From: Thalia democratica
Taxonomy: Eukaryota
Assembly: GCA_965202585.1 (NCBI GenBank)
Contig: OZ241830.1
Span: forward strand, 40,300,001 to 40,364,000
Length of the DNA stretch: 64,000 nt
Direction of reading: 5' to 3'
In this document: positions 977 to 30,868 of the stretch, piece after piece
Position numbering within the stretch: the first letter of the stretch is position 1
How the letters are laid out: each line of letters begins with the position of its first letter
Made by a program: the position numbers and the translations under genes
Notes under the pieces: model-generated
Seen by the model: the letters and a program-made list of their open reading frames with translations, nothing else
Told to the model about the DNA's origin: nothing
Database searches by the model: none

Positions 977-1042
977 ATTTGTAACTTGTTTTTAAGTGAA
1001 CTGCTTCTAAGAAGTGATAAAACATAACTCATTTCAGCTTAA

Positions 1043-4973: not shown

Positions 4974-5132
4974 TTATTTTCCACTCGAACACATTCTACC
5001 TTCGCACGAAGATCCTACTCGGCTTCTTGATTCTTCTTCAGTGAGACAATCTCCCCTGAACAGGCAGCCTTCAACTGTACTCATGATCATCAACATGACG
5101 AACATCAGTAATGATGCTAATTTACCCAACAT
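4974..5132 (-). CDS. Secreted 4-Cys RGD peptide precursor P1 (52 aa)
   Basis: MLGKLASLLMFVMLMIMSTVEG|CLFRGDCLTEEESRSRVGSSCEGRMCSSGK*. Hydrophobic signal peptide ending VEG; frame intact in four copies with synonymous differences. Confidence 0.9.
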   Translation of the reverse strand: MLGKLASLLMFVMLMIMSTVEGCLFRGDCLTEEESRSRVGSSCEGRMCSSGK

Positions 5133-6542
5133 ATTATATTTAGTTTACTCAAGCTGAAGTATTTACTTTGTTTTGGTTCTTTAGCAATATATGAAATAAA
5201 TTGTTTTAAATAGCTGGTTAATTACAGTATATAACCTATGTTTTGTAAAAATCTGTTATTTTTTCAATAACTTTATTTTTTTAATATTTTTTATAGTTTA
5301 GATTGTTTGCTTTAGCTTTAGCTCTATGTCTACTAGAATCAATTAGCAAAAAGAAATTATTAAAATACCGTTTACAATTTAGTGCAGTGTTTTAAGTCTT
5401 AATTAATAGCTTTTTTTATTTAAGTTCTAATAAAATCTTATTAAAATCCATTATTTATATCAATTTAAATTTTTACTACTAACATTATCAGTATCTAGCG
5501 TTAGGGTCAACAAACTGCAGCCCTAAAAGCAAAAATTTACGGCTGGCTAAGAAACTTTTGACATTAAAAAACTTTACAGTAAACTTCTTAACTAACAATG
5601 ACTAAACTTTATTTGTGCTCTGTTGTGGATTATTTTTGTACAATTAGGTTTAAGAATGATTTTTATATTTTTGCTAGACTTTAAAATAACTGCGTGCTAT
5701 AGAAAACGTTTTCTATCTTATTCACTTATAGAAACTTATAGGTAAATTTGCCGGCTGCTTCTAAATGGCTACTGACCCTCGATCTATTTAGATGCTATTA
5801 CATTTGAAAAAAAAAATTAATACTTTTGAATTATTAAGTATTTGTTTTTACCATTTAGCATAGTAAATGATAACCTAATGAGTTTCCTCAACATTTTTTT
5901 TTTTTATTAGTAAAATAAATTTGTAAATCCTGTACAAACAAACTGTTTTAATGAAAAGTTAGTTAAAAACTTGAGAAAACAGTTAAGTTTGCTGATGAAT
6001 ACGTCTTAGATACCTTTATAATATTTTATGATTGTTATTAATTTACCGGTAAACTAAATTTAGTAGTTATAGAATTTCATTTTCTATGAATATAATTCAA
6101 TTAATTTAATAAAAGCTTCAAAGTTCTGCATTGCTCATGAAATAAATGTATAAAGTATATCCATTTCAAATTCGTTCAAAAATTTAAACAAATAGAATTA
6201 TTTTGTTGGATAAATATAAACTTTTATATAATTTACATTTCTGGCATTTTTTAGTATATTTTTAAGGTTCATATATAAAGTTTTGCACAGATTTACATAG
6301 AACATACTTCATAATTTTCTAAAGACAAATCATGTCTTTTAAAAGCATTAAAAAAAATCATCAGTATATAATTAGAGATAATTTAAGTATTTATATACAA
6401 CTAAAAATTTTTTAATATATAAAACAAAATAGATTTAAAAGAAAAACCTGTTTCTATAATTTACTTCTTTTAAAATTTGTCTAATATAAGCAAATAGTTC
6501 TATCAAACTCATTTTACAGATTAAACTAGCTTCGTACTTTCG

Positions 6543-6574
6543 TTTATATAGCAAATATACACTGATTACGTAAC
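6543..6574 (-). promoter_or_regulatory. Candidate P1 core promoter: TATATAAA plus palindromic PAR-bZIP/C/EBP-type site (ATTACGTAAC)
   Basis: TATATAAA at 6550-6543; site at 6565-6574. The same pair occurs at 15123-15154, 23694-23725 and 32311-32342. A conserved donor (gaa|gtaaat, 6464) and an acceptor ~22 nt before the ATG (5155-5154) would define a 5'UTR intron. Confidence 0.45.
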
Positions 6575-8250
6575 TTAAGTTGTGTAAGATGCTGTTGTTT
6601 TTTCATTATACATAATTATGTAGTTGTTTAGTTTTTCGATGTATAATTATGTTGATACGATTACGGAAGAAACTTGCATGAACTTTTGTTGGTGCATTGA
6701 TTTTTTTATTTTGTTCACTTTGAATAATAAAAGTTATTTAAAAAATTTTTTTTTTGTTTAGTTCTATTTACAACTATAATCTAAAAATATTCAAAGTTAA
6801 ATGTAAATCTTAGTATGAAAAAATAATTATTTATATATAAATAAGTTCAATTTCAAAATACGTATAAACTAAAATTAGATTTAAAGTAATTAATTAAATC
6901 AAAAAGTAATATCAATAAAATTATTTTACCAGTAAAAATCTCCTTTAACATACTTCTTGTAAAAACATGTCAAATATAATAAATAATAATTTAAATTGAT
7001 TTTTCCATGAAAAGTGATCAAATTAACATTGTTTTTATTTAATTTCATCATTTATTAAAACAAGTTTTATCAACTAAAAAAGTATTAATGAAAAACAATA
7101 CAATAACCTTTTTTCTATTTAAAAATTTAAATGTACTATTTTACTGAGGATTTGAATAAATGCAATTTTTCACTGCTTAACTTAATATATACTTTTTTTA
7201 TTTATGAACTTTTCTGTTTCAAAATTTTTGCAAGCCCTAATAAGTATTTTTTATAAACATCGACATATGATAACTAATAAATACATGTGTTCTATTGTGC
7301 TTGTACTATATAATCTTAAATTTGGTAAGGAGTAATTGTTGTTAACGAGCTATAAGCAGCTGATCACTTTAAACAATTTTTACAACATTGAAGTACATAT
7401 TCACATTATTTTTTTTATTTAAATAGTTTTTTAAATTTGTAGCGTCTTTCTTTTTAATAGATCTTTTTCTTGGGTAGTTTGTTTTAGTGAGATGATGTAT
7501 ACTAGAAAATATCTTTTTTTAAAGCACATAACCAACTTCGAATATATAGTCTTTTATATTTTTTATTTTTTTTACTCTATTATCTCGTATTTGGTTTAAG
7601 AATTCGATTATTTTTTTTTTCTAATTTTAACAGTCAACATGATATTTTCAAACTACTTTTTAAATTTCTAAGGTTTTTATGTCGGTTATTTTTCAAAAAA
7701 TGTTTATATGTTGATTTTCATTGCACTTATAGTAATTTTATTGATCACGGTTTAATCTAGAATAATTTTTTTATTTATCAAAAGATTTTAGTTACAGTTA
7801 GTAAATGTCATTCTAAACTTATTAAAACTCTAAAAACAAATATAAGTCAAAAATTGTTAACCAAAGTATACTTTTAAAAACTTTTCTTTTCAAATTCTTT
7901 CAGTATATTAGAATCTAAAACATTAATTTTTGTTTTGTTAAGCATTTATTTTATATTTACTACCTTATAACCTATTTACTTAAAATATCAATTTCATAAA
8001 TTAATCGATAACTTGTTTCCAACTAACAAAAATAAAAGTATTTAAATACATCAAAATATTTAAAATTATGTAAAACATTATAAATGTCTAATTAATAACA
8101 AACTTTTGGTTAATTATTCTTTTATTATCAATTGGTGAAAAGAATTAAATAGTAACTTTATTTCAAGGTTATAAAAACGCTAAAAGTATCTAGCATGTTA
8201 AAATTCTAACAACTAAAATAAAATTTTCAAAATTTTTCTGCGACGATTTC

Positions 8251-9260
8251 TTACTTCTTACCTTGGTAGCTGTAAAATTTATTAATTATATTTAGATATT
8301 CAAACTATTCACTTCTTAGATGTTTGTTAAAAAAACATCCGAACAAAATAAGTTCGTTTTAACATACTAGTAACAGTTTGAAACATTGCTTTATTATATA
8401 TACAAAGTAATTTAGTATTATAAAGCTTGTTTAACAACTCTATGAACAGTGTTACTAGTTTAACAATGAGAAACGTGCGTTAGCTAAATGAAGCAAGTAA
8501 TTTGTAAACTATTTTTATTATTTATATAGTTTTTTGCTTTTACACAAACCATGGTTAGCTAAAACCTTTTGAATCAAACATAGCTGCTTTTTCTAAACTC
8601 TAAATACACAATTATCATATCTTCAACTTTAAAACTTATTTTGGTTGTTCGAAAAATGTGCTAGAAATTTACAAAAAAAATCAAACAAATAATGTAAACT
8701 AACTTTGAGTTGTTAGAATTCATCTGGTTTGAGTGATTGTTCAAATCAGATCTGGTACCAGACCCACCGTAGTTACTTTGGTGACCCTGATAACTATATA
8801 CAATATTAGTAATGCAATTGTGTTTTAATAGACTCATTTCGAATAAAAACTACTTTTATTTAGAATTAATTAGCTTGCTCTACTAAAATTTGAAAAAATC
8901 TTTGATTCTGTTGAAATTATTTTTTTAAATGCTAAGTTTAATTTTTTAACATTAGAATAGATTGTTTTTTAATTAAACATACTTACTTTGAATTGTTCGG
9001 GTTACATTGATTAGCATGATTATTGGCGTTAGACTGGTTTTGCCTATAAAATAAACTCTATAATAATATAAAAAGCAAAGAAAGGTTTAAAAAACTTGAA
9101 TATGATATAACTAATAAATTATTCTTTTAAAGCAATATACTAACTAAATTTTACCATTTAACTATCATATTCACAAGTACTCATAACCCTCTTACTAAAT
9201 GACTTTAGCTTGACTTAAACAGTTTCGATAATAAGTTTGTTAAACAACTTACTTGTCCAT
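8251..9260 (-). CDS. Asn/Gln-rich two-repeat protein copy B2 (57 aa, intact)
   Basis: Exons 9260-9253, 9043-8987, 8793-8704, 8269-8251: MDKQNQSNANNHANQCNPNNSNYQGHQSNYGGSGTRSDLNNHSNQMNSNNSNYQGKK*. Confidence 0.88.
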
Positions 9261-10402
9261 ATTTGTAACTTGTTGTCGAGTGAACTGCTTCTAAGAAGTG
9301 ATAAAAAATTACTCATTTCAGCTTAATTTATAGGAGAGATGCTAGTTTAGGTGAATCCCCACTGTGAGAAATAGTTTTCACTCGTCGGTGAATTCCCTAA
9401 TCGTCAACTGTACTTTCTATTTAAACAAATTTTGTAGTGATAAATGTCAATGAACATTTTTTGTATACTTTTATATACTTCTTTTGTATTTTATGTTAAC
9501 CTTTTTGGATTAAATACAACAACAACTTTTTGAAAGTTTTTACACAAACCAGCACATTCTTTCTATAATAGTATAAAGTATATAATTGTTGACGTAGTTA
9601 AGTAAATAGCTTTATTACATAACTCAAAATGTTGAACAATTCTTATTTAATACTAGTTTACGGGGAAAAAACAATAAAAAATAATCTTAACAGTTATAAA
9701 ACTATATACAATATAACTTTAGTAGTATTTATTATCAACTGAATTAGATATGAAATCTAAACATAGTCCAAAATGTAGTTTAGTCGTTGATATATATTAT
9801 AGAACTGTCCAAAAATAATATTATAAAGTTCAATTCAAAACCTTAATTAGAGTTTAAAAACTACAGAATAACTTTAAAAACTTTTATTAATTTTTTTTGA
9901 ATGTGTTTCTTTATTTGTATTTACGCAAAAATTTGACGTATTGGTTTTTATTGTAAATTAAGTATATATATTTAAAAGATTAATTGAAGTATATTATAAT
10001 ATAATGTAATACAACGTATATATTTTTTATTTATATACGGTAACGTGAGACTTAAACACGTTTTTCAGTTTCGTTTGCCAATGCAGTTGTGCAATCACAA
10101 AAAAGTATATAAATACTTAATAAAAACTCAATACTCTTTTATTTAAAGATAAAAAGCGCACGTTTAGTGTATTATGATTGTTTTTATTTTGAGTTACGTC
10201 GCACAATGTTCATACTGTAAACTTTTATAAATATTCCAAAACCATTGAATAGTTATTCATCGCATAGTGCTTAATTAAACTGGTATCGTTATAAAACACT
10301 AAAATGCAAATTAATATTATCATAAAATAGTTTTAGATGTTAATAAATAAACAGTTGAAATTTAAGAAAACCACCAGCAAATTGAAAAAATTTTATTATA
10401 AA

Positions 10403-10412
10403 GGGATTTTCC
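10403..10412 (+). promoter_or_regulatory. Consensus NF-kB site GGGATTTTCC, unit 2 spacer
   Basis: Exact consensus match at the homologous position. Confidence 0.6.
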
Positions 10413-11565
10413 TAAATATTTTACTGAGCTTTAAATCTATTTATTTAAAGACGTGATTTTCTTAAATCACAAAATCGAACAAGATTTATTTATACTTTAA
10501 TATACTTTAATTTATCATAAATAAAAACTTTTAATATCATTTTATAATTTTATACATGAACACATATTTAAATATATTAATAGTACATTGTTTTAAGCAT
10601 TATATTTGATTACCTTTGTTTATATATTCTTATGAACAAAATACGTTTTGAACTCAAGTTTTAAAGATTACAGTTTAGTTATTGTGAAACATTATTAAAC
10701 TATTTTGATTACTTTTAAATAGGGTTATACCAAAAAACAAAAGCACTTTTTAGTGTTTTTAAAATATTTACAATACTCTTTTGTAACTTTAAACAAATAT
10801 TTACTTTTTTTTAAAAACCTTTAACAAATATGTAGAGTGAGTGTCAATCATTTTGTATTAATTTCAAAACTTTTAAATTTTATTGTTCCACAATGCTTAA
10901 ACGATAATATGATCTCGTCAAAAATTTATATTAAAAACATTTAGATCAAAATTAACTTTTTTAATAATAAATATGCTTAAAAAAAACTTTTCAAACTTTC
11001 TATATCTTTCTTTTTACCATTTGTTTGACTGAAAAAAACTATTTTGTAAATCAAAAAGTATCAAGTTTTAAAACATTTGTATCTAAACTTCAATACAAAG
11101 TTGTTTACAAAATCAATTGAAGTAGCTATATTACTAGTATCAAAATATTAATTTTACATGTAGTGTTCAAGTAATTATGAAGAAGCTAGTTAAGTACTTA
11201 ATAATCGCTAACTTTCATAAGATATTTAATGTGGTTATTGTCATTAAGTATAAGTATACTACTAAAGTATTAGATATAACGTTATAAATTATTATTATCT
11301 AGAGTAGCAAATCAGCAAATTTCGTTGGAAAGTCAAAACTATAATTTTATTCATTTAACATAAAGTTAACAAACTTATCATTGTTATGACCACTAAACCC
11401 GTTCAAATAGGAAGTACAGTTAACGTTTAGGGAATTCACCAGCAAACATAAAATTTTCTCACATTGGGTATTAACCTAAATTAATATCTCTCGTATATAT
11501 TAAGCTGAGTAGAGCTATTTTTTGTCACTTTATAGAAGCAGTTCACTCGACAACAAGTTACTAAT

Positions 11566-12437
11566 ATGGACAAGTTAGCTGTTTATTGATTTTGTAGTTG
11601 ATATAGTTAAACTTGCATAAAGCTAATAGTATTGGACGAAAAAGTTAAGATAACTCTGTAATCATCATAGAATTAAAGTTTTATAAGTTGATAGATTACC
11701 TTTATTATACTATACTGCAGTTTTAATCATGTTTTACAAATAGATTTAAATAATATTTTTTTTATAGGCAAAGCCAATCTAACGCCAATAACCATGCTAA
11801 TCAATGTAACCCGAACAATTCAAAGTAAGTATAGTTTTTTTAGTACTAAAAAATTTCATGTTCCATAATCTAGTCTAACTTTACTCTACTAACAAAAACA
11901 ATTTCATAAAGAAATGTTTACTGTGTAAAAAAATGGAACAATGTGCTTTTGTGCTAAGAATTACAGACCTTGTAAAACTAGATAACTTTTTAAATATTTA
12001 ATTTACACGACACAAACCTTATATTGTTTATAAGTATATTTTAAATACAAAACTACACTATTTATACTTTTCACAGTTATCAGGGTTACCAAGGCAACTA
12101 CGGTGGGTCTGGTACCAGGTCTGATTTGAACACCACTCAAATCAGATGAATTCTAACAACACTAAGTTAGTTTACATTATTTGTTTATAAATAACTTTAA
12201 ATCTGTAAATTCTTAAATAATTAATATCTTAATTCTTAATTATTTAAATTAAAATATAGTTTTTTTTAATCTTAACAAAACATTATCGAAATATAAGATT
12301 TTTATTGCAACAAATTTTAATTATGCTTCAGTTAAATGTATTAAACAGTTTCTCAAATATTTCAAAAAGCTTTTATGATCTTTTTTATATAAAGTATTTT
12401 AATAACGTGTTTTTACAGCTACCAAGGAAAGAAGTAG
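11566..12437 (+). pseudogene. Asn/Gln-rich protein copy A2, frameshifted
   Basis: Exons 11566-11573, 11768-11824, 12077-12165 (89 nt rather than 90), 12419-12437. gaaca-ccactc versus gaacaaccactc in A3 gives ...DLNTTQIR*. Confidence 0.75.
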
Positions 12438-13522
12438 GAATAAAAAGAAACAAAATTATTGTCTTATTTTCTTCAATAAATAATAAAAATATCAAAATCG
12501 CTTATCTTTTATCTATAAAAGTAAAAACTTTTAGATTTTATTAGATAAAAGTATATGATTAAATACAACATAAGTTTATAGACAATATGTACAAAAAACA
12601 TTTATTTATAAATTGTCTAACTACAATAGTCTCAACTAAAGTACTGCTCAAGTTAGGGTGTACAGTAAAATGTTCATAAACATTACGACTGCTTAACAGT
12701 ATAACATTATGAAAACGAGTTTTTCAAATGTACCTAGTAAAAACCTTTGAGCTAAATTTTACTTATATTTTGAATAGAAATACTTTTCATGTCAAATAAG
12801 GTTATAACAGCACCTTCATAATTCTAATTAATTGACATTAAAAAAATCCACTTACTGATATGCACAAAAGACTAAAAAAGAAATAAACTGTGATATGCCT
12901 GACACTAACCTAAAACTAAAAAACATTAAATTTCATTGTTTGTCAAATGCTTAGTAATGGTTACTTAACGATTGTTTGATTAAAATTTTGCAATATACAG
13001 TTTGTAATTTTTTTTCTAGTTTTTAAAAACTACGCAACCCGCTAAAAAAAAATTCTAACAGATCTGGCCTGCAAAACACCTTTTTGTGTAAACTAGTGAC
13101 GTTTATTATATAAATATTTGAAATGTTGAAATCGTATATAAGCGTAGGTCTATAAATTTAAGTCTATGAAAAGTCTTCAAAAATATTCATTTATATTCTT
13201 ATTTGAAAGTAGTTAAAATTAGTACAACAACTGTTACCATGATAATAAAACAAAAAAAATTATCAACTCAATCTTTAATATGTAGAATTTAAGCTATTGG
13301 AAAAAAAAATTGTTTATATTTATCATTGGACAAAAAAAATGTTTTAATAAAAACTTGATATATAACAAAAACTTATAACAAGTTGTTTTGTTATTTAATG
13401 GTGATTATTGCATTACAAAACGTTTGAATATTTATTTATTAAACTTATAGAAAGTTTTTTTTTTATTGAATTCTTGTTGTAAATAAATATAATGCACATG
13501 TGAAGATCAGAAGAGCTTGTAT

Positions 13523-13681
13523 TTATTTTCCACTCGAACACATTCTACCTTCGCACGAAGATCCTACTCGGCTTCTTGATTCTTCTTCAGTGAGACAATC
13601 TCCCCTGAACAGGCAGCCTTCAGCTGTACTCATGATCATCAACATCACAAACATCAGTAATGATGCTAATTTACCCAACAT
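13523..13681 (-). CDS. Secreted 4-Cys RGD peptide precursor P2 (52 aa)
   Basis: MLGKLASLLMFVMLMIMSTAEG|CLFRGDCLTEEESRSRVGSSCEGRMCSSGK*. Confidence 0.9.
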   Translation of the reverse strand: MLGKLASLLMFVMLMIMSTAEGCLFRGDCLTEEESRSRVGSSCEGRMCSSGK

Positions 13682-16600
13682 ATTAGATTTAGTTTACTTA
13701 AAGCTGAAAATATTTACGTTGATTTACTTTTGTTGCAATATATTAAACATACTGTTTTAAATAGCTGGTCTATTACAGTTTATAACCTTTATTTACACTA
13801 TATTTGCGTATACCCATTATTTTTTTATTTTTCTTATTCTTTTAGTAATTTCAATGGCATCAAGTAGATTATTTTCTTTAGTTTTAGCTCTACATCTACA
13901 ACAAATAATTAACAATAAGAAGTTATTTAAAAACAGTTTACAATCTAGCGCGGTGTCTTTTGCCTTAATTAGTAGCTTTTTTGTTTAAGTTTTAATGAAA
14001 ATTTTTACACTTCATTATTTATATCAACTTAAATTTTATTACTTACTTTATCAGTACCGCGCTTGGATCAACATACTACAGCCCTCAAAGCAAAAATTTA
14101 CGGCTCGCTAAGTAACTTTTGACTGAAAACTTTTTCTTTTAACATTAAAAAAAGCTTACAGTTTAGTCCTTAACTAACAATGACTGAACTTTAAAAGTGC
14201 TCTGTTGTGGTTTATTTTTGTTTAAATAGGTTTAAAATTTAATTTCATATTGTTGCTAGACTTTGAAATAACTGTTGTAGCAAAAAGTTTTCTATCTTAT
14301 TCACTTGTAGAAACTTACAGATAAACTTGCCGGCTGCTTATTAAAGGCTGCCGACCCTCGATCTAGTTAGATGCTACTACATTTGAAGAAAATTGTTTTT
14401 TTGATAAAGCAAGTATAAGTTTTTTAAATTTAGCAAACTAAATTAAAACGTAATGAGTTTCCTAAACTTTTTGTTTTTAATACGTAAAAAAAATTTGTAA
14501 GTCCTGTAGAAACAAATTCTATTAAGACAAGTTAGTTAAAAAGTTGAGAAAACAATTAAGTTTGCTAATGAATACGTCTTAGATACCTTTATAATATTTT
14601 ATGATTGTTTTTAATTTATCGGTAAACTAAATTTAGTTTTTATAGAATTTAATTTTCTATTAACATAATTTAATTAGTTTAATAACAGCCTCACAGTTCT
14701 ACATTGTTCATGAAACAAATTTATAAATAATATAAATTTCAAACTTGTTTAAAAATTTAAACAAATAGAATTTTTTGTTGGATAAATATAAACTTTTATA
14801 TAAGTTACATTTCTGCATTTTTTAGTATACTTTTGAGGTTCATATATAAAGTTTTGCCCAGATTTACATAGGACATACTTCACACTTTTTTAAAGAAAAA
14901 TCATGTCTAACTAAAACCATTACTAATAAAACTATCAGTATTTAAATTAGAGATAATATTAAGTACTTATAGACAAGTAAAAGTTTTAAAAAATGTACAT
15001 AAAACAGAATAGATTTAAAACAAAAACCTGTTTCTTTAATTTACTTCTTTTAAAATTTATAAAATGTAAGCAAACAGTTCTATCAAACTCATTTTACAGA
15101 TTAAACTAGCTTCGTACTTTCGTTTATATAGCAAATATAAATTGATTACGTAACTTAAGTTGTGTAAGATGCTGTTGTTTTTTCATTATACATAATTATC
15201 TAGTTGTTTATATTTTTATGGTGTATAATTATGTTGATAAATTAACGAAAGAAACTTGCATGAACTTTTGTTGATGCATTAAGTCTTTCATTTTTTTTAC
15301 TTTAAATAATAAAAGTCATTTTTTTGCAAACTTTTCTTTAATTCAGTACTTTAAGTTAGCTATCCACAACTGTACTCTAAAAATATTCAAAGTAAGCATT
15401 TAAATCTAAGTTTAGCAAAAACATATATTTATTTATCAACATATTCAATTTCTAAAAACATGTAAACTGAATTAAGTTTTAAAGTAATTATATATATCAA
15501 AGTTATCTGAAAAACTGAAATATTATCTTACAAATTAAAAACCCTTTTAAACAAACTTCTTGTAAAAACTTGAAACATGTTAAATATGCTTATTTAGATT
15601 GATTTTTTCATTATTTAGAAATGAACATTGTTTAAATTGCTTATCATAAATTATTAAAACTAGTTTTATCAACTAAAAAAGTTTCAATGAAATAAGCAAA
15701 CAAAAACGTGTTTTCTACTTAAAAATTTAAATTTCCTCCGTTTGTTGAGACGTTAACTTAGTATATACTTTTTGTATTAATGAAATTGTTAGTTTCAAAT
15801 AGTTTTGCATGCCCTAATAAGTATTTTTTATAAACACCAACGTTTAGTAACTAGTAAATACATGTTTTCTATTTTTATTGTTTTACAAAAACTTAATTTT
15901 GGTAGTGATTAATTGTCTTTAACGAGCTATGAGCAGCTGAAAATTTTAAACAGTTTGTACAACATTAAATTACAAAATATACTACAATTATCTATTTTTA
16001 ACAAACTAGTTTAAAAAGTCTATAGTGTCGTGCTTTTTAATAGAACTTTTTCCTGGGTATCTTGTTTTAGTAAGATTAATTATATTACGAAACATCTTTT
16101 TTTTTAAACGCATTACCAACTTCAAATTTATATGTTATTACTTAATTTAAAAATGTTTACACTGTCAGCTCAAATTATTTAAGAATTTGATTTAGTTTTT
16201 TTTTTTTTAACAGTCAACATGATATTTTAAAGCTATTTTTTAATTTTTTCAAGGTTTTTATATCAGTTATTTTTCAAACAAATGTTTATATGTTGATTTT
16301 CATTGCACTTATAGTAATTTTATTGATCACCGTTTAATGTAAAATAATTTTTAATTCATCAAAAGATTTTAGTTACAGTTTGTAAATGTTATTCTAAACT
16401 TATTAAAACTCTAAATACAAATATAAGTCAAAAATTTTTAACCAAAGTATATTTTTCAGAACTTTTACTTATAAAACTTGTCATTATACTAGAACTTTGA
16501 ACATTAATTTTTGTTTTTTTTTGTTTTGTTAAGTATTTATTTTATATTTACTACCTTATTACCTATTTACTTAAAATACTAATTTACATAAACCAATCAG

Positions 16601-18983: not shown

Positions 18984-18993
18984 GGGATTTTCC
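18984..18993 (+). promoter_or_regulatory. Consensus NF-kB site GGGATTTTCC, unit 3 spacer
   Basis: Exact consensus match at the homologous position. Confidence 0.6.
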
Positions 18994-22080: not shown

Positions 22081-22239
22081 TTATTTTCCACTCGAACACA
22101 TTCTACCTTCGCACGAAGATCCTACTCGGCTTCTCGATTCTTCTTCAGTGAGGCAATCTCCCCTGAACAGGCAGCCTTCAGCCGTACTCATGATCATCAA
22201 CATCACGAACATCAGTAATGATGCAAATTTACCCAACAT
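22081..22239 (-). CDS. Secreted 4-Cys RGD peptide precursor P3 (52 aa)
   Basis: MLGKFASLLMFVMLMIMSTAEG|same mature peptide; two synonymous changes (TGC, TCG) in the mature region. Confidence 0.9.
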   Translation of the reverse strand: MLGKFASLLMFVMLMIMSTAEGCLFRGDCLTEEESRSRVGSSCEGRMCSSGK

Positions 22240-25200
22240 ATTAGATTTAGTTTACTTAAACTAAAAGTATTTACGTTTATTTAGTAGTTTCAAAATGTTT
22301 AAAACATATTGTAAATAACTGATTTATTACCGTATATAACTTATGTTTGTACTATTATTTATGACATCTATATAAATCTATTATTTTTTCAACAATTTTT
22401 TTTTTTAAAGTTTAATAGTTTAGATTGTTTGCTTTAGCTTCAGTTCTATGTCTACTAGAACTAATTAGCAAAAGGAAATTATTAAAAAACCGTTTACAAT
22501 TTAGTACAGTGGTTTTAGTCTTAATTAGTAGCTTTTTTAGCTTCAGTTTTAATAAAATTTTATTACAATCCATTATTTATATCAATTTGAATTTTTACTA
22601 CTAACTTTTTCAGTATCTAGCGTTTGGGTAAACAAACTGCAGCCCTCAAAGCAAAAATTTTACGGATTTCAAAGAAAATTTTGGCTGAAAACTTTTTCTT
22701 TTAACATTTAAAAAAAATAAAGTAAACTTCTTAACTAACAATGACTGAACTTTACTAGTACTCTGTTGTGGTTTATTTTTTATAATTAGGTTTAAAAATT
22801 ATTTTCATATAGTTGCTAGACTTTAAAATAACTGCGTGCTGTAGAAAACGTTTTCTATCTTCAGTTATAGAAATTTTTTATAGGAAAATTTGCCGGCTGC
22901 TTCTAAATGGCTGCTGACCCTCAATCTAGTTAGATGCTATTACATTTGAAAAAAAAACAATACTTTTGAAAGATCAAGTATTTGTTTTTAACATTTAGTA
23001 AAGTAAATTAAAACCTAATGAGTTTCCTCAACATTTTTGTTTTGTTTTTTTTTGTGGGTAAAATAAATTTGTAAGTTTTGTAGAAAAAAATTCTTTTAAT
23101 GACAAGTTAGTTAAAATCTTGAGAAAACAGTTAAGTTTGCTAATGAATACGTCTTAGATACCTTTATAATATTTTATGACTGTTTTTAATTTATCTGTAA
23201 ACTAAATCTCTTAGTTATAGAATTTCATTTTTTATGAACATAATTTAACTAGTTTAATAAAAAACCCGCAGTACTACATTGCTCATGAAATAAATTTATA
23301 AAGTATAAACATATCAAAGTTGTTCAAAAATTTAAACAAATAGAATTACTTTGTTGATGAATATAGACTTTTATATATGTTACATTTTTGCATTTTTTAG
23401 TATACTTTTAAGGTTCATATATAAAGTTTTGCACAGATTTACATAGGATATACTTAACAATTTTTTAAAAACAAATCATGTCTTTTAAAAGCATTAAAAA
23501 AATCATCAGTATTCAAATTAGAGATAATTTTAAGTATTTAGAGACAAGTAAAAGTTTTAAAGAAGGTTTATAAAACAAAGTACGTTTAAAACTAAAACCT
23601 GTTACTATAATTTACTTCTTTTAGAATTTATCAAATATAAGCAAACAGTTCTATCAAACTCATTTTACTGATTAAACTAGCTTCGTACTTTCGTTTATAT
23701 AGCAAAAATAAACTGATTACGTAACTTAAGTTGTGTAAGATGCTGTTGTTTATTTCCTATAATCATGTAGTTGTTTATAGTTTCCTGATGTATAATTATA
23801 TTGATAAAATTACGGAAGAAACTTGCATGAACTTTCGTGGTGCATTAAGTCTTTCATTTTTTTTACTTTAAATAATAAAATTCAATTTTTTGTAACTTTT
23901 TCTTATATTCAGTACTTTAAGTTAGCTATTCACAACTGTAGTCTAAAAATAATTTAAGTTAGCATGTGAATCTTAGTTTAGCAAAAACATATATTTATTT
24001 ATAAAATATTCAATTTCGAAAAACATGTAAGCTAAATTACGTTTTAACGTAATTAATTATATCAGAATTTAAAACAGAAAAAGTATATTACAAATTAAAA
24101 ACCCCTTGAACAAACTTCTTGTAAAAAACTTGAAACATGCTAAATATGCTTATTTACATTGATTTTTCCATCGTTTAAAAATGAAAATTGTTTAAATTGT
24201 TTATCATAAATTATTAAAACAATTTTTATTAACTAAAAAAGTTTCTAATGAAATCAGAAAACAAAAACGTTTTTTATACTTGTAAATTTAAATGTCCTCC
24301 GTTTGTTGAGAACTTTGATAAATGAAGTTTGTTGAGAACTTTATCACCGCTTAACTTAGTATATATTTTTCGTATTAATGAACTTGTAAGTTTTAAATAG
24401 TTTTGCATGACCTAATAAGTATTTTTATAAACACCAACGTTTAGTAACTAATAAATACATGTTTTCTATTTTTATTGTTTTACAAAAGCCTTAATTTCAT
24501 AGTGAGTAATTGTCTTTAACGAGCTATGAGCAGCTAAACACTTTAAACAATTTGTACAACATTAAAGTACAAAATATATTGTAAATAAACTAGTTTAAAA
24601 AGTTTGTAGCGTCGTTCTTTTTATTAGGACTTTTTTTTTGGTATCTTGTACTAGTAAGATTAATTTTATTGGGAAATATCTTTTTTTTTAAGCATATTAC
24701 CAACTTCCAATTTATACTAGGTATTATTTAATTACATAATTTTAAAGTTGTTTACACTATCAGCTCAAATCAGTTTAAAAAATTCTTATTTTTTTTCAAT
24801 TTTGAAATAGTCAACATGATATTGTCAAACTTTTTTTTTAATTTTTAAGGTTTTTTACGTTTGTTATTTTTCAAACAAATGTTTATATGTTGGTTTTCAT
24901 TGAAAATATAGTAACTTTATTGATCACGGTTTAATTTAAAATATTTTTTTTAATTCTCAAAATATTTAGTTAAATTTATAAATGTTCTTTTAAACTTATT
25001 AAAAGCCTATAAACAAATATAAGTCAATAATTGTTAACCAAAGTATGTTTTTAAGAACTTCTGTTTATAAGACTTGCCAGTATACTATAACTTTGAATAT
25101 TAATTTTTGTTGTTTTGTTTTGTTAAGTATTTACATTGTATTTACTACCTTATTATGTATTTACTTAAAATACTAATTTACATAAAACAATCAATACTTT

Positions 25201-25422
25201 TGTTTACAAGTAGCGAAAATATATCAAAATAATTTAAATTAAGTAAAACATTATAAATGTCTAATTAACAACAAACTTTTGGTTATTTGTTCATTTATTT
25301 ACAATTGTTGAAAAGATTTAAATAGTAAGTTCGTTTCAAGTTTATAAAAATGGTAAAAGTATATAGAATGTTACAATTCTAACAATTAAATAAAGTTTTT
25401 AAAACTTTGCTGCGATGTTTTC

Positions 25423-26456
25423 TTACTTCTTACCTTGATAGCTGTAAAATGAGTAATGGTTATTTATATGTTCAAAATCTTACACTTTTTAGATGTTTGT
25501 TAAAATAAGATAAGAACGAAATAAATTCGTTTGAACATAAAAGCAACAATTTACGAAGTCCTTATTTTATTATATATACAAAATTAATTTAGTATTATAA
25601 AGCTTGTTTAACAACTCTATTAAACAGTGTTACTAGTTTAACAATGAGAAACGTACGTTAGTTTAAATAAAGCAAGTACTTTGTAAATTATTATTATTAT
25701 TATTTATGTATTTTTCACGTTTACACAAACTATGGTTAGCTAAAAGCTTTTAAATCAAACATAGCTTTTTTTTCTAAACTTCAAATACATAGTTATCATA
25801 GTTACAAGTTTAAAAATTTTTGTTGTTGGTCCGAAAAATATGTTCAAAAATTTAAAACATTTTTGTACAAATAGCTTAAACTAACTTTGAATTGTTAAAA
25901 TTCATCTGATTTTAGTGATTGTTCAAATCAGATCTGGTACCAGACCCACCGTAGCTGCTTTGGTAACCCTGATAACTGTGAACAATATTAGTAATGCAGT
26001 TGTGTTTTTATAGACTCATTTTGAATATAAACCTTTTTTAATTAGAATTAATTAGCTTGCTCTACTAAAGTTTGAAAAAAATTATGATTCTGTTAAAATT
26101 AATTCTAAATATGCTAAGTTTAGTTTTTAAACATTAAAATTAATTATTTTTCAATCAAACTTTACTTACTTTGAATTGTTCGGGTTACATTGATTAGCAT
26201 GATTATTGGCGTTAGACTGGCTTTGCCTGTAAGATAAAATCAATAACAATATAAAGAGCAAATAAAGGTTTTAATACTTGAATTTATATAACTAAGTAAA
26301 TTATTCTTTAAAAGCAATATACTAACTAAATTTTAGCATTTAACTATCATATTCACAAGTACTCATAAGTTATGAGTCATAACCCTCTTACTAAACAACT
26401 TTAGCTTGACTTAAACAACTTCACTGATAAAATCATAAAACAACTTACTTGTCCAT
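25423..26456 (-). pseudogene. Asn/Gln-rich protein copy B4 with a premature stop
   Basis: Exons 26456-26449, 26226-26170, 25975-25886, 25441-25423. TCA>TAA at 25914-25912 truncates repeat 2 after NNH. Confidence 0.8.
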
Positions 26457-27598
26457 ATTTATAACTTGTTGTCGAGTGAAATGCTTCTAAGAAGTGATAA
26501 AAAAATAACTTATTTCAGCTTAATGTATAAGATAGTTGTTGATTTAGGTGAATCCCCAATGTGAAAAATAGCTTTCACTCGTCGGTGAATTCCTTAATCG
26601 TCAACTGTACTTTCTATTTAAACAGATTTTGTAGTGATATATGTCATTGAACATTTTTTGTATACTTTTATATACTTCTTTTGTATTTTATGCTTACCTT
26701 TTTGGATTAAATACAACAACAATTTTTTGAAACTTTTTACACAAACCAGCACATTCTTTCTATAATAGTATAAAGTATATAATTGTTGACGTAGTTAAGT
26801 ATATAGCTTTATTACATAACTCAAAATGTTGAACAATTCTTATTTAATACTAGTTTACGGGGAAAAAACAATAAAATATAATCTTAACAGTTATAAAACT
26901 ATATACAATATAACTTTAGTAGTATTTATTATCAACTGAATTAGATATGAAATCTAAACATAGTCCAAAATGTAATTTAGTCGTTGATATATATTATAGA
27001 ACTATCCAAAAATAATATTATAAAGTTCAATTCAAAACCTTAATTAGAGTTTAAAAACTACAGAATAACTTTAAAAACTTTTATTAATTTTTTTTGAATG
27101 TGTTTCTTTATTTGTATTTACGCAAAAATTTGACGTATTGGTTTTTATTGTAAATTAAGTATATATATTTAAAAGATTAATTGAAGTATATTATAATTAA
27201 ATGTAATACAACGTATATATATTATATTTATATACGGTAACGTGAGACTTAAACACGTTTTTCAGTTTTGTTTGCCAATGCAGTTGTGCAATCACAAAAA
27301 AGTATATAAATACTGAATAAAAACTCGGTATTCTATTATTTACAGATAAAAAGCACACATTTAGTGTACCACAATTGTTTTCTTTTTAAGTTACGTCGCA
27401 CAATGTTCATACTGTAAATTTTTATAAATATTCCAAAACCTTTAAATAGTTATTCATCGCATAGTGCTTAATTAAACTGGTACCGTTATAAAACACTTAA
27501 ATGTAAATTAATATCATCATAAAATAGATTTGGGTGTTCATAAATAAACAGTTGACGTTTAAGAAAACCACCAGTAAATTGAAAAAATTTATTACATA

Positions 27599-27608
27599 GG
27601 GATTTTCC
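27599..27608 (+). promoter_or_regulatory. Consensus NF-kB site GGGATTTTCC, unit 4 spacer
   Basis: Exact consensus match at the homologous position. Confidence 0.6.
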
Positions 27609-28758
27609 CAAATATTTTACTGAGCTTTAAAGCTATTTATTTTTATACGTGATTTTCTTAAATCTTAAAATCGAACAAGATTTATTTATAAATCATATTA
27701 ATTTATTATAAATAAAAACTTTTAATAATATTTCATAATTTTATACATGAACACATATTAAAATATATTAATAGTACTTTGTTTTAAGCATTAAATTTGA
27801 TTACTTGTGTTTATATATTCTTATGAACAAAATACGTTTTGAACTCAACTTTTAAAGATTACAGTTTAGGTAATGTGAAACATTATTACACAATTTTGAT
27901 TATTTTTAAATAGGGTTATACCCAAAAACAAATGCACTTTTTTGTGAATTTAGAATATTTACAATACTGTTTTGTAACTTTAAACAAACATTTACAGTTT
28001 TTTTTCTCAAACCTTTAACACATATGTAGAGTGAGTGTCAATCGTTTTTTATTAATTTCAAAACTTTTAAATTTTATTGTTTCACAATGCTTAAACGTTA
28101 AAATATAAAATTCTCAAAAGTTTATATTAAAAACATTGAGATCAAAATTAACTTTTTTAATAATAAATATGCTTAAAAAAACTTTTCAAACTTTCTATAT
28201 CTTTCTTTTAACCATTTATTGGACTGAAAATAAAACTATTTTGTAAATCAAAAAACATCAAGTTTTTAAACATTTGTATCAAAACTTCAATACAAAGTTG
28301 TTTACAAAATCAACTGAAGTAGCTATATTATTAGTATCAAAACATTAATTTTACATGTAGTGTTCAAGTAATTATGAAGAAGCTTGTTAAGTACTTAATA
28401 ATCGCTAACTTTCATAAGATATTTGTAGTTTTTATCATTAAGTAAAAGTATACTACTAAAGTATTAGATATAACGTTATAAATTGTTATTATCTAGAGTA
28501 CCAAATAAGCAAATTTCGTTGGAAAGTCAAAACGATCATTTTATTTATAAAACATAAAGTTAACAAACTTATCATTGTTATGACTAATAAACCCGTTCAA
28601 ATAGGAAGTACAGTTAACGTTTAGGGAATTCACCAGCAAACAAAACATTTTCACACATTGGGGATTAACCTAAATTAATACCTCTCGTATATATTAAGCT
28701 GAGTTGAGCAATTTTTGTCACTTCATAGAAGCAGTTCACTCGAAAACAAGTTACAAAT

Positions 28759-29623
28759 ATGGACAAGTTAGTTGTTTATTGATTTTGTAATTGATATAGT
28801 TAAACTTGCATAAAGATAATAGTATTGGACTAAAAAGTTAAAATAACTCTGTAATCATCATAAAATTAAAGTTTTATAAGTTGATAGATTACCTTTATCA
28901 TACTATACTGAAGTTTATCATGTTTTACAAATATTATTAGTATATATACATATAAATAATAATTTTTTTATAGGCAAAGCCAATCTAACTCCAATAACCA
29001 TGCTAATCAATGTAACCCGAACAATTCAAAGTAAGTAGAGTTTATTTTAATACTAAAAAATTTCATGTTCCATAATCTAGTCTAACTTTACTCTACTAAC
29101 AAAAATAATTTTAAAAGGACATTTTTACTGTGTAAAAAAATAGAACAATGTGCTTTTTTGCTAAGAATTACAGACATATTAAAACTAGATAACTTTATAA
29201 ATATTTTATTTACACGACACAAACCTTTTATTATTTATAAGTTATGTTTTTTCAAAATACAAAACTACACTATTTATACTTTTCACAGTTATCAGGGTTA
29301 CCAAAGCAACTACGGTGGGTCTGGTACCAGGTCTGATTTGAACAATCACTCAAATCAGATGAATTCTAACAACGCTAAGTTAGTTTACATTATTTTTTGG
29401 TAAATAACTTTAAAATCTGTAAATTCTTAAATAAACGAACATAGTTTTTTTTTAATCTTAACAAAACATTATCGAAATATAAGATTTTTATTGTAACAAA
29501 TTTTAATTATGCTTCAGTTAAATGTATTAAACAGTTTCTCAAATTTTTCAAAAAGCTTTTATGATCTTTTTTATATAAAGTATTTTAATAACGTGTTTTT
29601 ACAGCTACCAAGGAAAGAAGTAG
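28759..29623 (+). CDS. Asn/Gln-rich two-repeat protein copy A4 (57 aa, intact)
   Basis: Exons 28759-28766, 28974-29030, 29289-29378, 29605-29623; all GT-AG, frame open. Confidence 0.88.
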
Positions 29624-30709
29624 GAATAAAAAGAAGCAAAATTATTGTCTTATTTTCTTCAATAAATAATAAAAATATCAAAATCGCTTATTTTTTATCT
29701 ATAAAAGTAAAAACTTTTAGATTTTATTAGATAAAAGTATATGATTAAATACAACATAAGTTTATAGACAATATGTACAAAAAGCATTTATTTATAAATT
29801 GTCTAACTACAATAGTCTCAACTAAAGTACTGCTCAAGTTAGGGTGTACAGTAAAATGTTTATAAACATTACGACTGCTTAACAGTATAACATTATGAAA
29901 ACGAGTTTTTCAAATGTACCTAGTAAAAACCTTTGAGCTAAATTTTACTTATATTTTGAATAGAAATACTTTTCATGTCAAATAAGGTTATAACAGCACC
30001 TTCATAATTCTAATTAATTGACATTAAAAAAATCCACTTACTGCTATTCACAAAAGACTAATAAAGAAATAAACTGTGATATGCCTGACACTAACCTAAA
30101 ACTAAAAAACATTAAATTTCATTGTTTGTCAAATGCTTAGTAATGGTTACTTAACGATTGTTTGATTAAAATTTTGCAATATACAGTTTGTATTTTTTTT
30201 TTTAGTTTTTGAAAACTATGCAACCGCTAAAATTTTTTCTAACAGATCTGTTCTGCAAAACACCTTTTTGTGTAAACTAGGGACGTTTATTATATAAATA
30301 TTTAAAATGTTGAAATCGGATATAAGCGTAGGTCCATAAATTTAAGTCTATGAAAAACCTTCAGAAATATTCTTTTATATTTTTATTTGAAAGTTGCTAA
30401 AATTAGTACAACAACTGTTACCATGATAATAATACAAAAAAACATAAGTTTCAACTCAATCTTTAATATGTAGAATTTATGCTATTGGAAAAAAAAATTG
30501 TTTATTTTTATCATTGGACAAAAAAAATGTTTTAATAAAAACTTGATATATAACAAAAACTTATAACACGTTGTTTTTGTTATTTATTAGTGATTATTGC
30601 ATTACAAAACGTTTGAATATTTATTTATTAAACTTAAAGAATTTTTTTTTTCTATTAAATGCTTGTTGTGAATATATAATGCACATATGAATATCAGAAG
30701 AGCTTGTAT

Positions 30710-30868
30710 TTATTTTCCACTCGAACACATTCTACCTTCGCACGAAGATCCTACTCGGCTTCTTGATTCTTCTTCAGTGAGACAATCTCCCCTGAACAGG
30801 CAGCCTTCAGCAGTACTCATGATCATCAACATCACAAACATCAGTAATGATGCAAATTTGCCCAACAT
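30710..30868 (-). CDS. Secreted 4-Cys RGD peptide precursor P4 (52 aa)
   Basis: MLGKFASLLMFVMLMIMSTAEG|CLFRGDCLTEEESRSRVGSSCEGRMCSSGK*. Confidence 0.9.
   Translation of the reverse strand: MLGKFASLLMFVMLMIMSTAEGCLFRGDCLTEEESRSRVGSSCEGRMCSSGK

What the first reader, a model, noticed from the sequence alone, without database searches (positions are those of the whole stretch)
4974..30868. Hidden four-copy secreted, amidated cyclic-RGD peptide (CLFRGDC...CEGRMCSS-GK)
Seen: a 52-codon minus-strand ORF below the ORF-track cutoff, at 5132-4974, 13681-13523, 22239-22081 and 30868-30710. It has a 22-aa hydrophobic leader, then CLFRGDCLTEEESRSRVGSSCEGRMCSS-G-K-stop. Established: Cys-constrained RGD loops bind RGD-type integrins (disintegrins, leech decorsin/ornatin, synthetic CRGDC peptides), and C-terminal G-K signals carboxypeptidase trimming plus PAM amidation. 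Inference: an endogenous minimal disintegrin-like or cell-adhesion-modulating peptide of 28 residues with two disulfides; I do not recognise a named family.
Basis: partly seen in the sequence, partly recalled or inferred. Interest (0 to 1): 0.9.

Follow-up and report, generated by a model that had tools for sequence, protein, structure and literature searches.

The report
Orphan secreted peptide gene, four copies
A tiny unannotated gene, repeated at least four times in an AT-rich marine animal genome (probably a pelagic tunicate), is real, transcribed and under protein-level selection; it encodes a secreted 28-residue cysteine-bridged peptide with no detectable relatives, and nothing yet shows that its RGD motif binds integrins.

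Summary
An identical-length 52-codon minus-strand ORF sits at all four stated places, once per ~8.6-kb tandem unit. It behaves like a real gene.

- It is the only ATG-ORF of 35 or more codons in unit B that is intact in all four units. Its GC is 0.42, against 0.15-0.31 for the others.
- It is the unit's longest high-conservation island.
- 7 of 9 substitutions between copies are synonymous and 8 lie at third codon positions (P=0.004). Both amino-acid changes fall in the leader, and the mature peptide is invariant.
- Contigs from two independent oligo-dT marine metatranscriptomes cover the ORF, running unspliced through the stop, while the flanks are silent.
- The leader is a canonical signal peptide. 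The -Gly-Lys-stop end is a standard amidation signal.

No relative was found by any search: exhaustive phmmer over 1.84 billion proteins, Pfam, PDB sequences and folds, metagenome loci, or the literature.

The disintegrin/integrin reading is untested here. RGD in a 30-mer occurs by chance about 0.6-1.6% of the time, and its conservation says nothing because every mature residue is conserved. The gene fails membership tests for the disintegrin, vasopressin/oxytocin and calcitonin families.

Best reading: a lineage-restricted secreted signalling-type peptide, dosage-amplified in a three-gene cassette. The same scan noted this cassette on this same stretch (s1-311209).

The parts
4974..5132 (-). 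Copy A of the 52-codon peptide gene ORF (leader variant L5, V20)
13523..13681 (-). Copy B of the ORF (L5, A20). Start codon 13681-13679, leader codons 13681-13616, mature part 13615-13526, RGD codons 13606-13598, stop 13525-13523.
   Evidence: Oligo-dT RNA contigs lie at 13473-13612 and 13513-13674.
22081..22239 (-). Copy C of the ORF (F5, A20). Carries three private synonymous changes: Thr19, Cys29, Ser35.
30710..30868 (-). Copy D of the ORF (F5, A20)
13694..13696 (-). In-frame TAA five codons upstream of the ATG, so the ORF cannot be extended N-terminally through the upstream AG
13704..13710 (-). Pyrimidine tract plus AG, 23 nt before the ATG, kept in all four copies. Candidate (trans-)splice acceptor; inferred only.
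13755..13784 (-). TATA-like boxes (TATAAA 13784-13779; TATTTAAAA 13763-13755) 75-105 nt upstream of the ATG. The second is disrupted in copy C.
13465..13522 (-). Conserved 3' UTR, followed by A-rich AATAAA-type signals. An RNA contig runs contiguously from the ORF to 13473.
325..34391 (.). Four complete ~8.6-kb tandem units: A 325-8600, B 8601-17204, C 17205-25782, D 25783-34391. Each carries one ORF copy. The tail of a preceding unit is at 1-324.
34392..40871 (.). Partial fifth unit, interrupted by a ~2.8-kb insertion (35911-38745) and ending before the peptide-gene offset. This is the right end of the array.

Best explanation
Each ~8.6-kb tandem unit carries a small, apparently intronless (in its coding part) gene on the minus strand. 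It encodes a 52-residue prepropeptide. SHOWN: the ORF is kept intact in all copies, evolves under purifying selection on the amino-acid sequence, is GC-enriched like an exon, and is present in poly(A)-selected RNA libraries. INFERRED from the sequence and from established secretory-pathway biochemistry: (1) the 22-residue leader (n-region with Lys4, a 13-residue hydrophobic core, small residues at -3/-1: A/V-E-G) is cut by signal peptidase, so the product starts with Cys; (2) the C-terminal Lys is trimmed by a carboxypeptidase E/D-type enzyme and the exposed Gly is converted by PAM to a C-terminal amide, giving a 28-residue, near-neutral peptide (4 basic and 5 acidic residues; predicted monoisotopic mass 3078.28 Da with two disulfides and an amide); (3) the four cysteines (C-x5-C-x13-C-x4-C) form two disulfides. 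Most likely function (inference): an extracellular ligand of hormone, neuropeptide or cytokine type that acts on an endogenous receptor of the animal itself, with gene dosage raised by tandem duplication. The reason is that the mature peptide is invariant while the leader and synonymous sites drift. That is the reverse of the pattern usual for arms-race toxins and antimicrobial peptides. The peptide is also not cationic. An RGD-binding integrin is one candidate receptor but has no specific support. My rough odds: real protein-coding gene 0.9; secreted 0.85; amidated 0.6; endogenous-receptor ligand 0.45.
For:: it is the only one of 12 ATG-ORFs of 35 or more codons in unit B that is intact in all four units. 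GC is 0.42 against 0.15-0.31 for the others and 0.24 for the region; the ORF island (13486-13690) is the longest high-conservation island of the unit (0.92 all-four identity against a unit mean of 0.67). Conservation falls to 0.56-0.58 right upstream of the ATG; 9 substitutions, 7 synonymous and 8 at codon position 3; 6.2 non-synonymous were expected against 2 observed (P=0.004). The other sense frames give 1 synonymous and 8 non-synonymous. Both replacements lie in the leader, and there are 0 replacements and 2 synonymous changes in the mature part; two independent oligo-dT marine metatranscriptomes each give a contig on the ORF (13513-13674 with 5 mismatches; 13473-13612 with 3 mismatches, running unspliced through the stop). 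Elsewhere in the 5.5 kb laid, only exon-like pieces of the neighbouring gene match well. A at -3 of the ATG, an in-frame upstream stop, the stop codon kept in all copies, a conserved 3' UTR and A-rich polyadenylation-type signals; hydropathy peaks at 3.2 over residues 8-16 and turns hydrophilic after residue 25; net charge is +4/-5; language-model features resemble small secreted Cys-rich peptides only at class level (scores 0.82-0.83).
Against: No 5' end, transcript strand or tissue of expression is known. The RNA evidence is two low-depth contigs (depth 2 and 3.6) from runs that were found by searching for this very gene. No orthologue outside the two closely related source organisms was available, so selection is measured only among paralogues; gene conversion could contribute to their similarity, although it would not produce a third-position bias. 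Signal-peptide cleavage, amidation and disulfide pairing are predictions. Only two of the five AlphaFold models were confident. The signalling-ligand function rests on an evolutionary-pattern argument and on charge, not on any receptor or homology evidence. A conserved kB site in each unit would fit an immune effector equally well.
Confidence: 0.5

Rival explanations
1. One reading: the Cys1-Cys7 loop presents RGD to RGD-type integrins, so the peptide is an endogenous minimal disintegrin-like modulator of cell adhesion, for example of blood cells.
For: RGD lies inside a C-x5-C loop in all four copies. From general knowledge, not tested here, disulfide-constrained CX5C-CX7C RGD peptides bind alphaV/alpha5-class integrins. 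AlphaFold puts a small hairpin-like bridge at residues 2-3/6-7 around the RGD. Earlier scan notes report several integrin genes in this genome (s1-287049, s1-313702; not checked by me). In the whole-genome contig of the second organism, the only listed difference around the RGD codons is the synonymous 13595 A>G.
Against: Its conservation is uninformative because all 30 mature residues are invariant. There is no similarity to disintegrins or leech antiplatelet proteins by Pfam, PDB sequence or fold. The C1-C7 pairing is unproven. In RGDC the Asp is directly followed by Cys, unlike the long loops of natural disintegrins.
Confidence: 0.12
2. A host-defence or deterrent peptide aimed at other organisms (antimicrobial, antifouling or toxin-like), amplified for output and perhaps induced through the kB site of the cassette.
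For: Tandem amplification of small secreted Cys-rich amidated peptides is typical of immune and venom genes. One perfect kB site, GGGATTTTCC, is conserved in all five units, with 0.22 expected in the whole window. The Atlas nearest neighbours are termicin, nodule Cys-rich peptides and scorpion, spider and cone-snail toxins, all below the 0.9 level that would count as more than a lead.
Against: The peptide is slightly acidic (pI about 5), not cationic or amphipathic. The mature part is invariant while the leader varies, the opposite of the diversifying pattern common in such families. The kB site is about 3.1 kb from the gene, on its 3' side, between two other genes.
Confidence: 0.2
3. A highly derived member of a known chordate hormone family: calcitonin/CGRP-type (N-terminal Cys1-Cys7 ring, helix, C-terminal amide) or vasopressin/oxytocin-type (ring directly after the signal peptide; compare Ciona CFFRDC... 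with CLFRGDC here).
For: The architecture matches the three CT/CGRP hallmarks listed in PMC6283891: Cys at positions 1 and 7, a predicted helix at 10-17 and an amidation signal. Ci-CT is 30 residues with a Cys1-Cys7 ring. As in VP/OT precursors, the Cys-ring peptide directly follows the signal peptide (PMC7181382), and the ring residues resemble Ciona VP.
Against: No Pfam hit at E<=10 and no phmmer hit. The ring lacks the conserved Ser/Thr-Thr-Cys of the CT family. The end would be Ser-NH2, not Pro-NH2. There are two extra cysteines. It is a one-exon precursor without a propeptide, against four exons for Ci-CT. For VP/OT, the ring is Cys1-Cys7 rather than Cys1-Cys6, and no neurophysin-like Cys-rich exon exists in the unit.
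Confidence: 0.05
4. Not a functional protein-coding gene: a conserved non-coding or regulatory island, or a decaying duplicate kept alike by gene conversion, with the RNA contigs coming from DNA carry-over or read-through.
For: The ORF is short. The antisense frame 2 is also open across the 159 nt in all copies. RNA depth is low, and the runs were selected for holding this sequence. Other non-coding islands in the unit reach about 0.9 conservation.
Against: The third-position bias of substitutions (8 of 9) and the 7:2 synonymous excess are specific to this frame: the antisense frame gives 5:4 and the others 0-1 synonymous. GC is 0.42. Signal-peptide anatomy is intact in all copies. Two independent RNA libraries hit the ORF but not its flanks. 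The plus-strand ATG-ORF is intact in only 2 of 4 copies.
Confidence: 0.08

Closest known systems
Generic metazoan amidated, disulfide-constrained secreted peptides (prepropeptide = signal peptide + peptide + Gly-basic end)
   Same: A signal peptide is directly followed by a short Cys-containing peptide. A C-terminal Gly-Lys comes before the stop, which is a substrate for carboxypeptidase and PAM. The size is about 30 residues.
   Different: No sequence relative in any library searched. One peptide per one-exon precursor, amplified as whole genes in an 8.6-kb tandem cassette rather than as repeats within a precursor.
Calcitonin/CGRP family (e.g. Ciona Ci-CT, 30 aa, Cys1-Cys7, Pro-NH2; PMC6283891)
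   Same: Cys at positions 1 and 7 of the mature peptide, a predicted helix after the ring, a C-terminal amidation signal and a length of 28-30 residues.
   Different: No detectable sequence similarity. No Thr before the second Cys and no Pro-amide. Two additional cysteines. No propeptide or dibasic sites. One coding exon.
Vasopressin/oxytocin-type peptides of tunicates (Ciona CFFRDCSNMDWYR, Styela CYISDCPNSRFWST-NH2; PMC7181382)
   Same: The Cys-ring peptide lies immediately after the signal peptide. It is C-terminally extended relative to nonapeptides. The ring residues F-R-(G)-D resemble Ciona VP.
   Different: The ring spans Cys1-Cys7, not the Cys1-Cys6 conserved in all family members. There is no neurophysin domain in the ORF or in the unit.
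Disintegrins, leech decorsin/ornatin and synthetic cyclic RGD peptides
   Same: An RGD tripeptide lies between two cysteines in a secreted peptide.
   Different: 4 Cys instead of 6-14. No Pfam disintegrin match. A 5-residue loop with Asp abutting Cys instead of an 11-13-residue hairpin. Encoded by the animal itself rather than in a blood-feeder's saliva or a venom. No binding data.

Membership tests
Disintegrin (Pfam PF00200) | Match to the disintegrin domain profile with its conserved 8-14 Cys framework | tested here: not met
   hmmscan against Pfam-A at E<=10 gave 0 families. The mature part has only 4 Cys.
Disintegrin (Pfam PF00200) | RGD/KGD at the tip of a long mobile hairpin loop that binds integrins | not testable with these tools
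   RGD is present in a C-x5-C segment. Loop exposure and binding need a solved structure and binding assays. The AlphaFold model is small and only 2 of its 5 models are confident.
Vasopressin/oxytocin-type neuropeptide | Cysteines at positions 1 and 6 of the mature peptide (PMC7181382) | tested here: not met
   The cysteines are at positions 1 and 7.
Vasopressin/oxytocin-type neuropeptide | Peptide located immediately after the signal peptide | tested here: met
   The predicted cleavage after A/V-E-G puts Cys at position 1. The cleavage site is predicted, not measured.
Vasopressin/oxytocin-type neuropeptide | C-terminal neurophysin domain in the precursor | tested here: not met
   The ORF stops 30 residues after the leader in all copies. 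RNA contigs run unspliced through the stop. There is no Cys-rich open segment elsewhere in the unit and no Pfam hit.
Calcitonin/CGRP family | N-terminal ring closed by a disulfide (Cys1-Cys7 in CT type; PMC6283891) | tested here: inconclusive
   The Cys1/Cys7 spacing is present. The actual disulfide partner is unknown because two more cysteines compete.
Calcitonin/CGRP family | Central alpha-helix after the ring | tested here: inconclusive
   AlphaFold single-sequence model: helix at 10-17, best model pLDDT 82.6, but the five models range from 45 to 83.
Calcitonin/CGRP family | C-terminal amide (Pro-NH2 in CT type) and sequence match to the family profile | tested here: not met
   The Gly-Lys-stop end predicts Ser-NH2, not Pro-NH2. 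There is no Pfam Calc_CGRP_IAPP hit at E<=10. The ring ends G-D-C rather than S/T-T-C.
Secreted amidated peptide precursors (general class) | N-terminal signal peptide with n/h/c regions and small residues at -3/-1 | tested here: met
   Lys4; hydrophobic core at residues 5-17 (9-residue hydropathy up to 3.18); A or V at -3 and G at -1. No dedicated predictor was available.
Secreted amidated peptide precursors (general class) | Gly followed by basic residue(s) at the C-terminal processing site | tested here: met
   All four copies end Ser-Gly-Lys-TAA. Whether amidation actually occurs cannot be tested here.

The most novel reading that the evidence does not exclude
An animal encodes its own minimal cyclic-RGD peptide: a 28-residue amidated mini-ligand whose Cys1-Cys7 loop presents RGD to the animal's own integrins. 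It would act as a soluble, dosage-amplified, possibly NF-kB-linked switch of blood-cell or epithelial adhesion, an endogenous counterpart of venom disintegrins and of synthetic cyclic RGD drugs.
Probability: 0.12. Interest if true: 0.75.

Novelty: new member of a known kind. Interest (0 to 1): 0.45.

Why it matters
Gene prediction misses ORFs this small, and this one was absent from 1.84 billion representative proteins. Even so, it passes every test of a working gene that sequence alone allows, and it is present in ocean metatranscriptomes. If the genome is a pelagic tunicate, as earlier notes of this scan say, the peptide adds to the small catalogue of bioactive peptides in the sister group of vertebrates. 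It is a concrete candidate for peptidomics, receptor de-orphanisation and adhesion assays. The invariance of the mature peptide across duplicates that have drifted at silent sites predicts a specific molecular partner. The cassette it sits in (a divergent pair of N/Q/Y-rich genes around a conserved kB site) gives a testable link to immune regulation.

Tried and rejected
1. Homology searches all gave nothing.
- The word-indexed search of 5.8 billion proteins found no candidate.
- Exhaustive phmmer over 1.84 billion representatives gave one hit, P0001. It is the translation of a 4x-repeated unrelated sequence that shares only GDCL..E..RSR, so I judged it spurious.
- Also empty: Pfam, PDB sequences, back-translated patterns in JGI metagenome contigs (599 pattern hits, none confirmed), exact-protein look-ups for both leader variants (33, 34) and a literature string search (64).

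2. Fold searches with the AlphaFold model gave no meaningful match. Foldseek against PDB gave one hit at E 8.6. VIA-align wide gave nothing at Z>=2.

3. ESM Atlas gave only class-level likeness to small Cys toxins, below the 0.9 level.

4. tRNA and Rfam scans of the window were empty. The conserved island at 12040-12198 turned out to be an exon of a neighbouring gene, not an RNA gene.

5. Further paralogues in the window: tblastn at E<=100 found only the four copies.

6. Multi-exon reading (a donor at AAG|GTAGAA inside the ORF, with downstream exons): rejected. Both RNA contigs run unspliced through that site and through the stop, conservation continues to the stop, and no Cys-rich downstream exon exists.

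7. My first guess that the genome was Hydra-like or cnidarian was dropped after the earlier scan notes pointed to a tunicate.

8. The bacterial promoter/terminator scan is irrelevant to a eukaryote.

9. I could not inspect the exact mismatch positions of the RNA contigs or the second organism's full ORF.


Full report
OBSERVATION. Translating the minus strand at the four stated intervals gives an ATG-to-TAA ORF of 52 codons each time. The product has a 22-residue hydrophobic leader and a 30-residue hydrophilic part. That part begins CLFRGDC, has two more cysteines (pattern C-x5-C-x13-C-x4-C) and ends Ser-Gly-Lys-stop. The copies differ only at leader residues 5 (Leu/Phe) and 20 (Val/Ala). A 36-nt probe from the RGD region finds exactly these four sites, with zero expected in shuffles.

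The ORFs sit at the same offset in a head-to-tail array of ~8.6-kb units:
- the tail of an earlier unit at 1-324;
- unit A 325-8600, B 8601-17204, C 17205-25782, D 25783-34391;
- a fifth unit that carries a 2.8-kb insertion and ends at 40871, before the ORF offset.

Pairwise unit identity is 85-94%. The region has 20-27% GC. 'Four copies' therefore describes this window, and the array continues past its left edge.

IS IT A GENE? Five independent lines say yes.

(1) Intactness. Of the 12 ATG-ORFs of 35 or more codons in unit B (both strands), this is the only one intact in all four units. It has GC 0.42, against 0.15-0.31 for the rest.

(2) Conservation. In a four-way alignment, 67% of columns are identical in all units. 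The ORF island (13486-13690) scores 0.92 and is the longest such island. Identity falls to 0.56-0.58 immediately upstream of the ATG and to about 0.62 some 60 nt past the stop.

(3) Substitution pattern. There are nine substitutions among the copies. Eight are at third codon positions and seven are synonymous. Simulation that places the same base changes at random expects 6.2 non-synonymous against 2 observed (P=0.004). The two other sense frames give 1 synonymous to 8 non-synonymous. The three antisense frames give 0:9, 5:4 and 1:8. Both replacements are conservative and lie in the leader. The mature part has two synonymous changes and no replacement. Gene conversion alone would not create a third-position bias.

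(4) Gene anatomy. There is an A at -3 of the ATG and an in-frame TAA at 13696-13694, so the ORF cannot be a downstream exon in this frame. TATA-like boxes lie 75-105 nt upstream. A pyrimidine-AG 23 nt before the ATG is kept in all copies and may be a (trans-)splice acceptor. The stop codon is retained in all copies, and a conserved ~60-nt 3' UTR is followed by A-rich AATAAA-type signals.

(5) RNA. Two oligo-dT RNA-seq runs from marine metatranscriptomes of different studies each hold a contig on the ORF. One covers 13513-13674 (5 mismatches, depth 3.6). The other covers 13473-13612 (3 mismatches, depth 2) and runs unspliced through the stop into the 3' UTR. In the 5.5 kb laid, the only other good matches in those runs fall on exon-like pieces of a neighbouring gene, not on the AT-rich spacers.

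Caveats on the RNA: depth is low, the contigs carry no strand, and the runs were found by querying this sequence. Two runs of unrecorded library type cover the whole stretch evenly, so I take them to be whole-genome DNA. One is labelled as a second organism. Around the RGD codons its single contig shows only the synonymous 13595 A>G, a change also present in unit C and in both RNA contigs.

WHAT THE PRODUCT LOOKS LIKE. The leader has the three regions of a signal peptide: Met-Leu-Gly-Lys, a 13-residue hydrophobic core (9-residue hydropathy up to 3.18), and Ser-Thr-Ala/Val-Glu-Gly with small residues at -3 and -1. Cleavage there leaves Cys as residue 1.

A C-terminal Gly-Lys is the standard substrate for carboxypeptidase trimming and peptidylglycine alpha-amidating monooxygenase (established biochemistry, not tested here). 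That would give a 28-mer ending Ser-NH2. It has 4 basic and 5 acidic residues, pI about 5, and a predicted monoisotopic mass of 3078.28 Da with two disulfides. There is no dibasic or furin-type site inside the peptide.

AlphaFold without an alignment gave pLDDT 82.6 for the best model, but the five models ranged from 45 to 83. The best model has a small bridge at residues 2-3/6-7 around the RGD and a helix at 10-17. Disulfide connectivity cannot be read from these outputs.

RELATIVES. None was found.
- Word-indexed search of 5.8 billion proteins: no candidate.
- Exhaustive phmmer over 1.84 billion cluster representatives: one hit, which is a translated 4x repeat sharing a few residues and is not a relative.
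- Pfam: no family at E<=10.
- PDB sequences: none.
- PDB folds: none, by Foldseek or VIA-align.
- JGI metagenome contigs: 599 pattern matches, none confirmed.
- Exact-product look-ups: none.
- The ring heptapeptide string does not occur in the paper library.
- The ESM Atlas places it near termicin, nodule Cys-rich peptides and scorpion, spider and cone-snail toxins at 0.82-0.83. That is below the level at which such hits mean more than 'small secreted Cys-rich peptide'.

Small ORFs are usually not predicted in eukaryote assemblies, so their absence from protein libraries is weak evidence of true restriction to this lineage.

CONTEXT. Earlier notes of this scan (AI notes, which I did not verify) identify the genome as a pelagic tunicate. 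What I saw is consistent with that. The sequence occurs in marine metagenomes and metatranscriptomes. Introns are GT-AG. Neighbouring ORFs carry motifs that read like ShKT and TSP1 domains (read by eye, Pfam not run on them). Composition is very AT-rich, at or below the low end of the 28.0-42.7% genome GC range reported for tunicates, among which some thaliaceans are AT-rich (PMC13746493).

Each unit also carries a degenerate inverted repeat (arms ~8660-9430 and ~11400-12210). Its arms are a divergent pair of paralogous four-exon genes. They encode ~58-residue Asn/Gln/Ser/Tyr/Gly-rich products ending Tyr-Gln-Gly-Lys-Lys-stop, with no signal peptide that I could see. One metatranscriptome contig splices exon 3 to exon 4 exactly at the acceptor at 16866. 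Between the pair lies one perfect kB site, GGGATTTTCC, conserved in all five units, with 0.22 expected in the whole window. The peptide gene is convergent with the plus-strand member of the pair, about 1.1 kb from its last exon. So the amplified unit is a three-gene cassette, as another first-reader note on this same stretch proposed (s1-311209).

HOW IT MOST LIKELY WORKS. Shown: a conserved, transcribed, coding ORF with signal-peptide anatomy. Inferred: secretion, Lys trimming, amidation and two disulfides.

For function I commit to an extracellular ligand acting on a receptor of the animal itself (hormone-, neuropeptide- or cytokine-like), at about 0.45. I have three reasons. First, the mature peptide is frozen while the leader and silent sites drift, which is the reverse of the usual toxin and antimicrobial-peptide pattern (conserved leader, diversifying mature part). 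Second, the peptide is slightly acidic, unlike membrane-active defence peptides. Third, amidation is a hallmark of receptor-active peptides. Tandem duplication with an identical product then reads as dosage amplification.

The kB site keeps an immune-effector or cytokine role open (about 0.2 for an outward-directed defence peptide).

The integrin reading (about 0.12) is chemically reasonable, since constrained CX5C RGD loops are known integrin ligands (my own knowledge, not tested). It has no statistical or comparative support here.

COMPARISON WITH KNOWN FAMILIES. The peptide is not a disintegrin: there is no domain match, it has 4 cysteines rather than 8-14, and the loop has 5 residues.

It resembles tunicate vasopressin/oxytocin-type peptides in that a Cys ring lies directly after the signal peptide, and in the residues F-R-(G)-D (Ciona CFFRDC...; PMC7181382). 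It fails the family's invariant Cys1-Cys6 spacing and has no neurophysin domain.

It matches the three architectural hallmarks of the calcitonin/CGRP family (Cys1-Cys7 ring, following helix, C-terminal amide; PMC6283891). It has no sequence match, lacks the conserved Thr before the second Cys and the Pro-amide, has two extra cysteines, and has a one-exon precursor without a propeptide. I therefore file it only under the general class of secreted, disulfide-constrained, amidated peptides. It is a new member of that class with no family.

VERDICT. The gene is real with about 0.9 probability. Secretion and amidation are likely. The disintegrin-like function is unsupported but not excluded. Interest is moderate: this is a well-evidenced orphan peptide gene in an under-studied chordate lineage, with clear experiments available, and it would be more interesting only if the RGD proves functional.

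Noticed in passing
window 8140-9320 (-) and 11455-12440 (+), repeated in every unit; e.g. exon 3 copies at 522, 8793, 17399, 25975, 34586 (-) and 3541, 12077, 29289, 40727 (+): Each 8.6-kb unit holds a divergent pair of paralogous four-exon genes on the arms of a degenerate inverted repeat. They encode ~58-residue Asn/Gln/Ser/Tyr/Gly-rich products ending YQGKK-stop, with no evident signal peptide. One oligo-dT RNA contig splices exon 3 to exon 4 at the acceptor at 16866. Of the nine exon-3 copies whose frame I read, the copy at 12077 has a frameshift and the one at 25975 a stop; a tenth copy near 20680 was not read.
   Followed up: partly
window 1833-1842, 10403-10412, 18984-18993, 27599-27608, 38985-38994 (+): One perfect NF-kB consensus site, GGGATTTTCC, per unit, in the ~2-kb centre between the divergent gene pair. 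It is conserved in all five units, with 0.22 matches expected in the whole window.
   Followed up: partly
window 13500-13760 (+): The antisense frame over the peptide ORF is open in all four copies (86-codon GTG ORF in unit B). It shows 5 synonymous to 4 non-synonymous changes, its ATG sub-ORF is intact in only 2 of 4 units, and it runs into unconserved sequence. It is most likely a by-product of the sense ORF.
   Followed up: yes
window 54841-55065 (+): A 74-codon ORF that reads like a decayed histone H4 (recognisable GKGG...HRK...RRLA.RGGVK...ETRGVL motifs with many replacements). Probably a retro-pseudogene or a degenerate copy.
   Followed up: no
window 35911-38745: A ~2.8-kb insertion interrupts the fifth, partial unit, and the array ends at about 40871. 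The content of the insertion was not identified; it has only short ORFs, some Gly/Arg/Pro-rich.
   Followed up: no
window 1-324: The first 324 bases match the last 325 bases of a unit (87%). The tandem array, and probably more copies of the peptide gene, therefore continues beyond the left edge of the window. Summed whole-genome contig depth over the unit is several-fold that of single exact-match contigs, which fits more than four units.
   Followed up: partly
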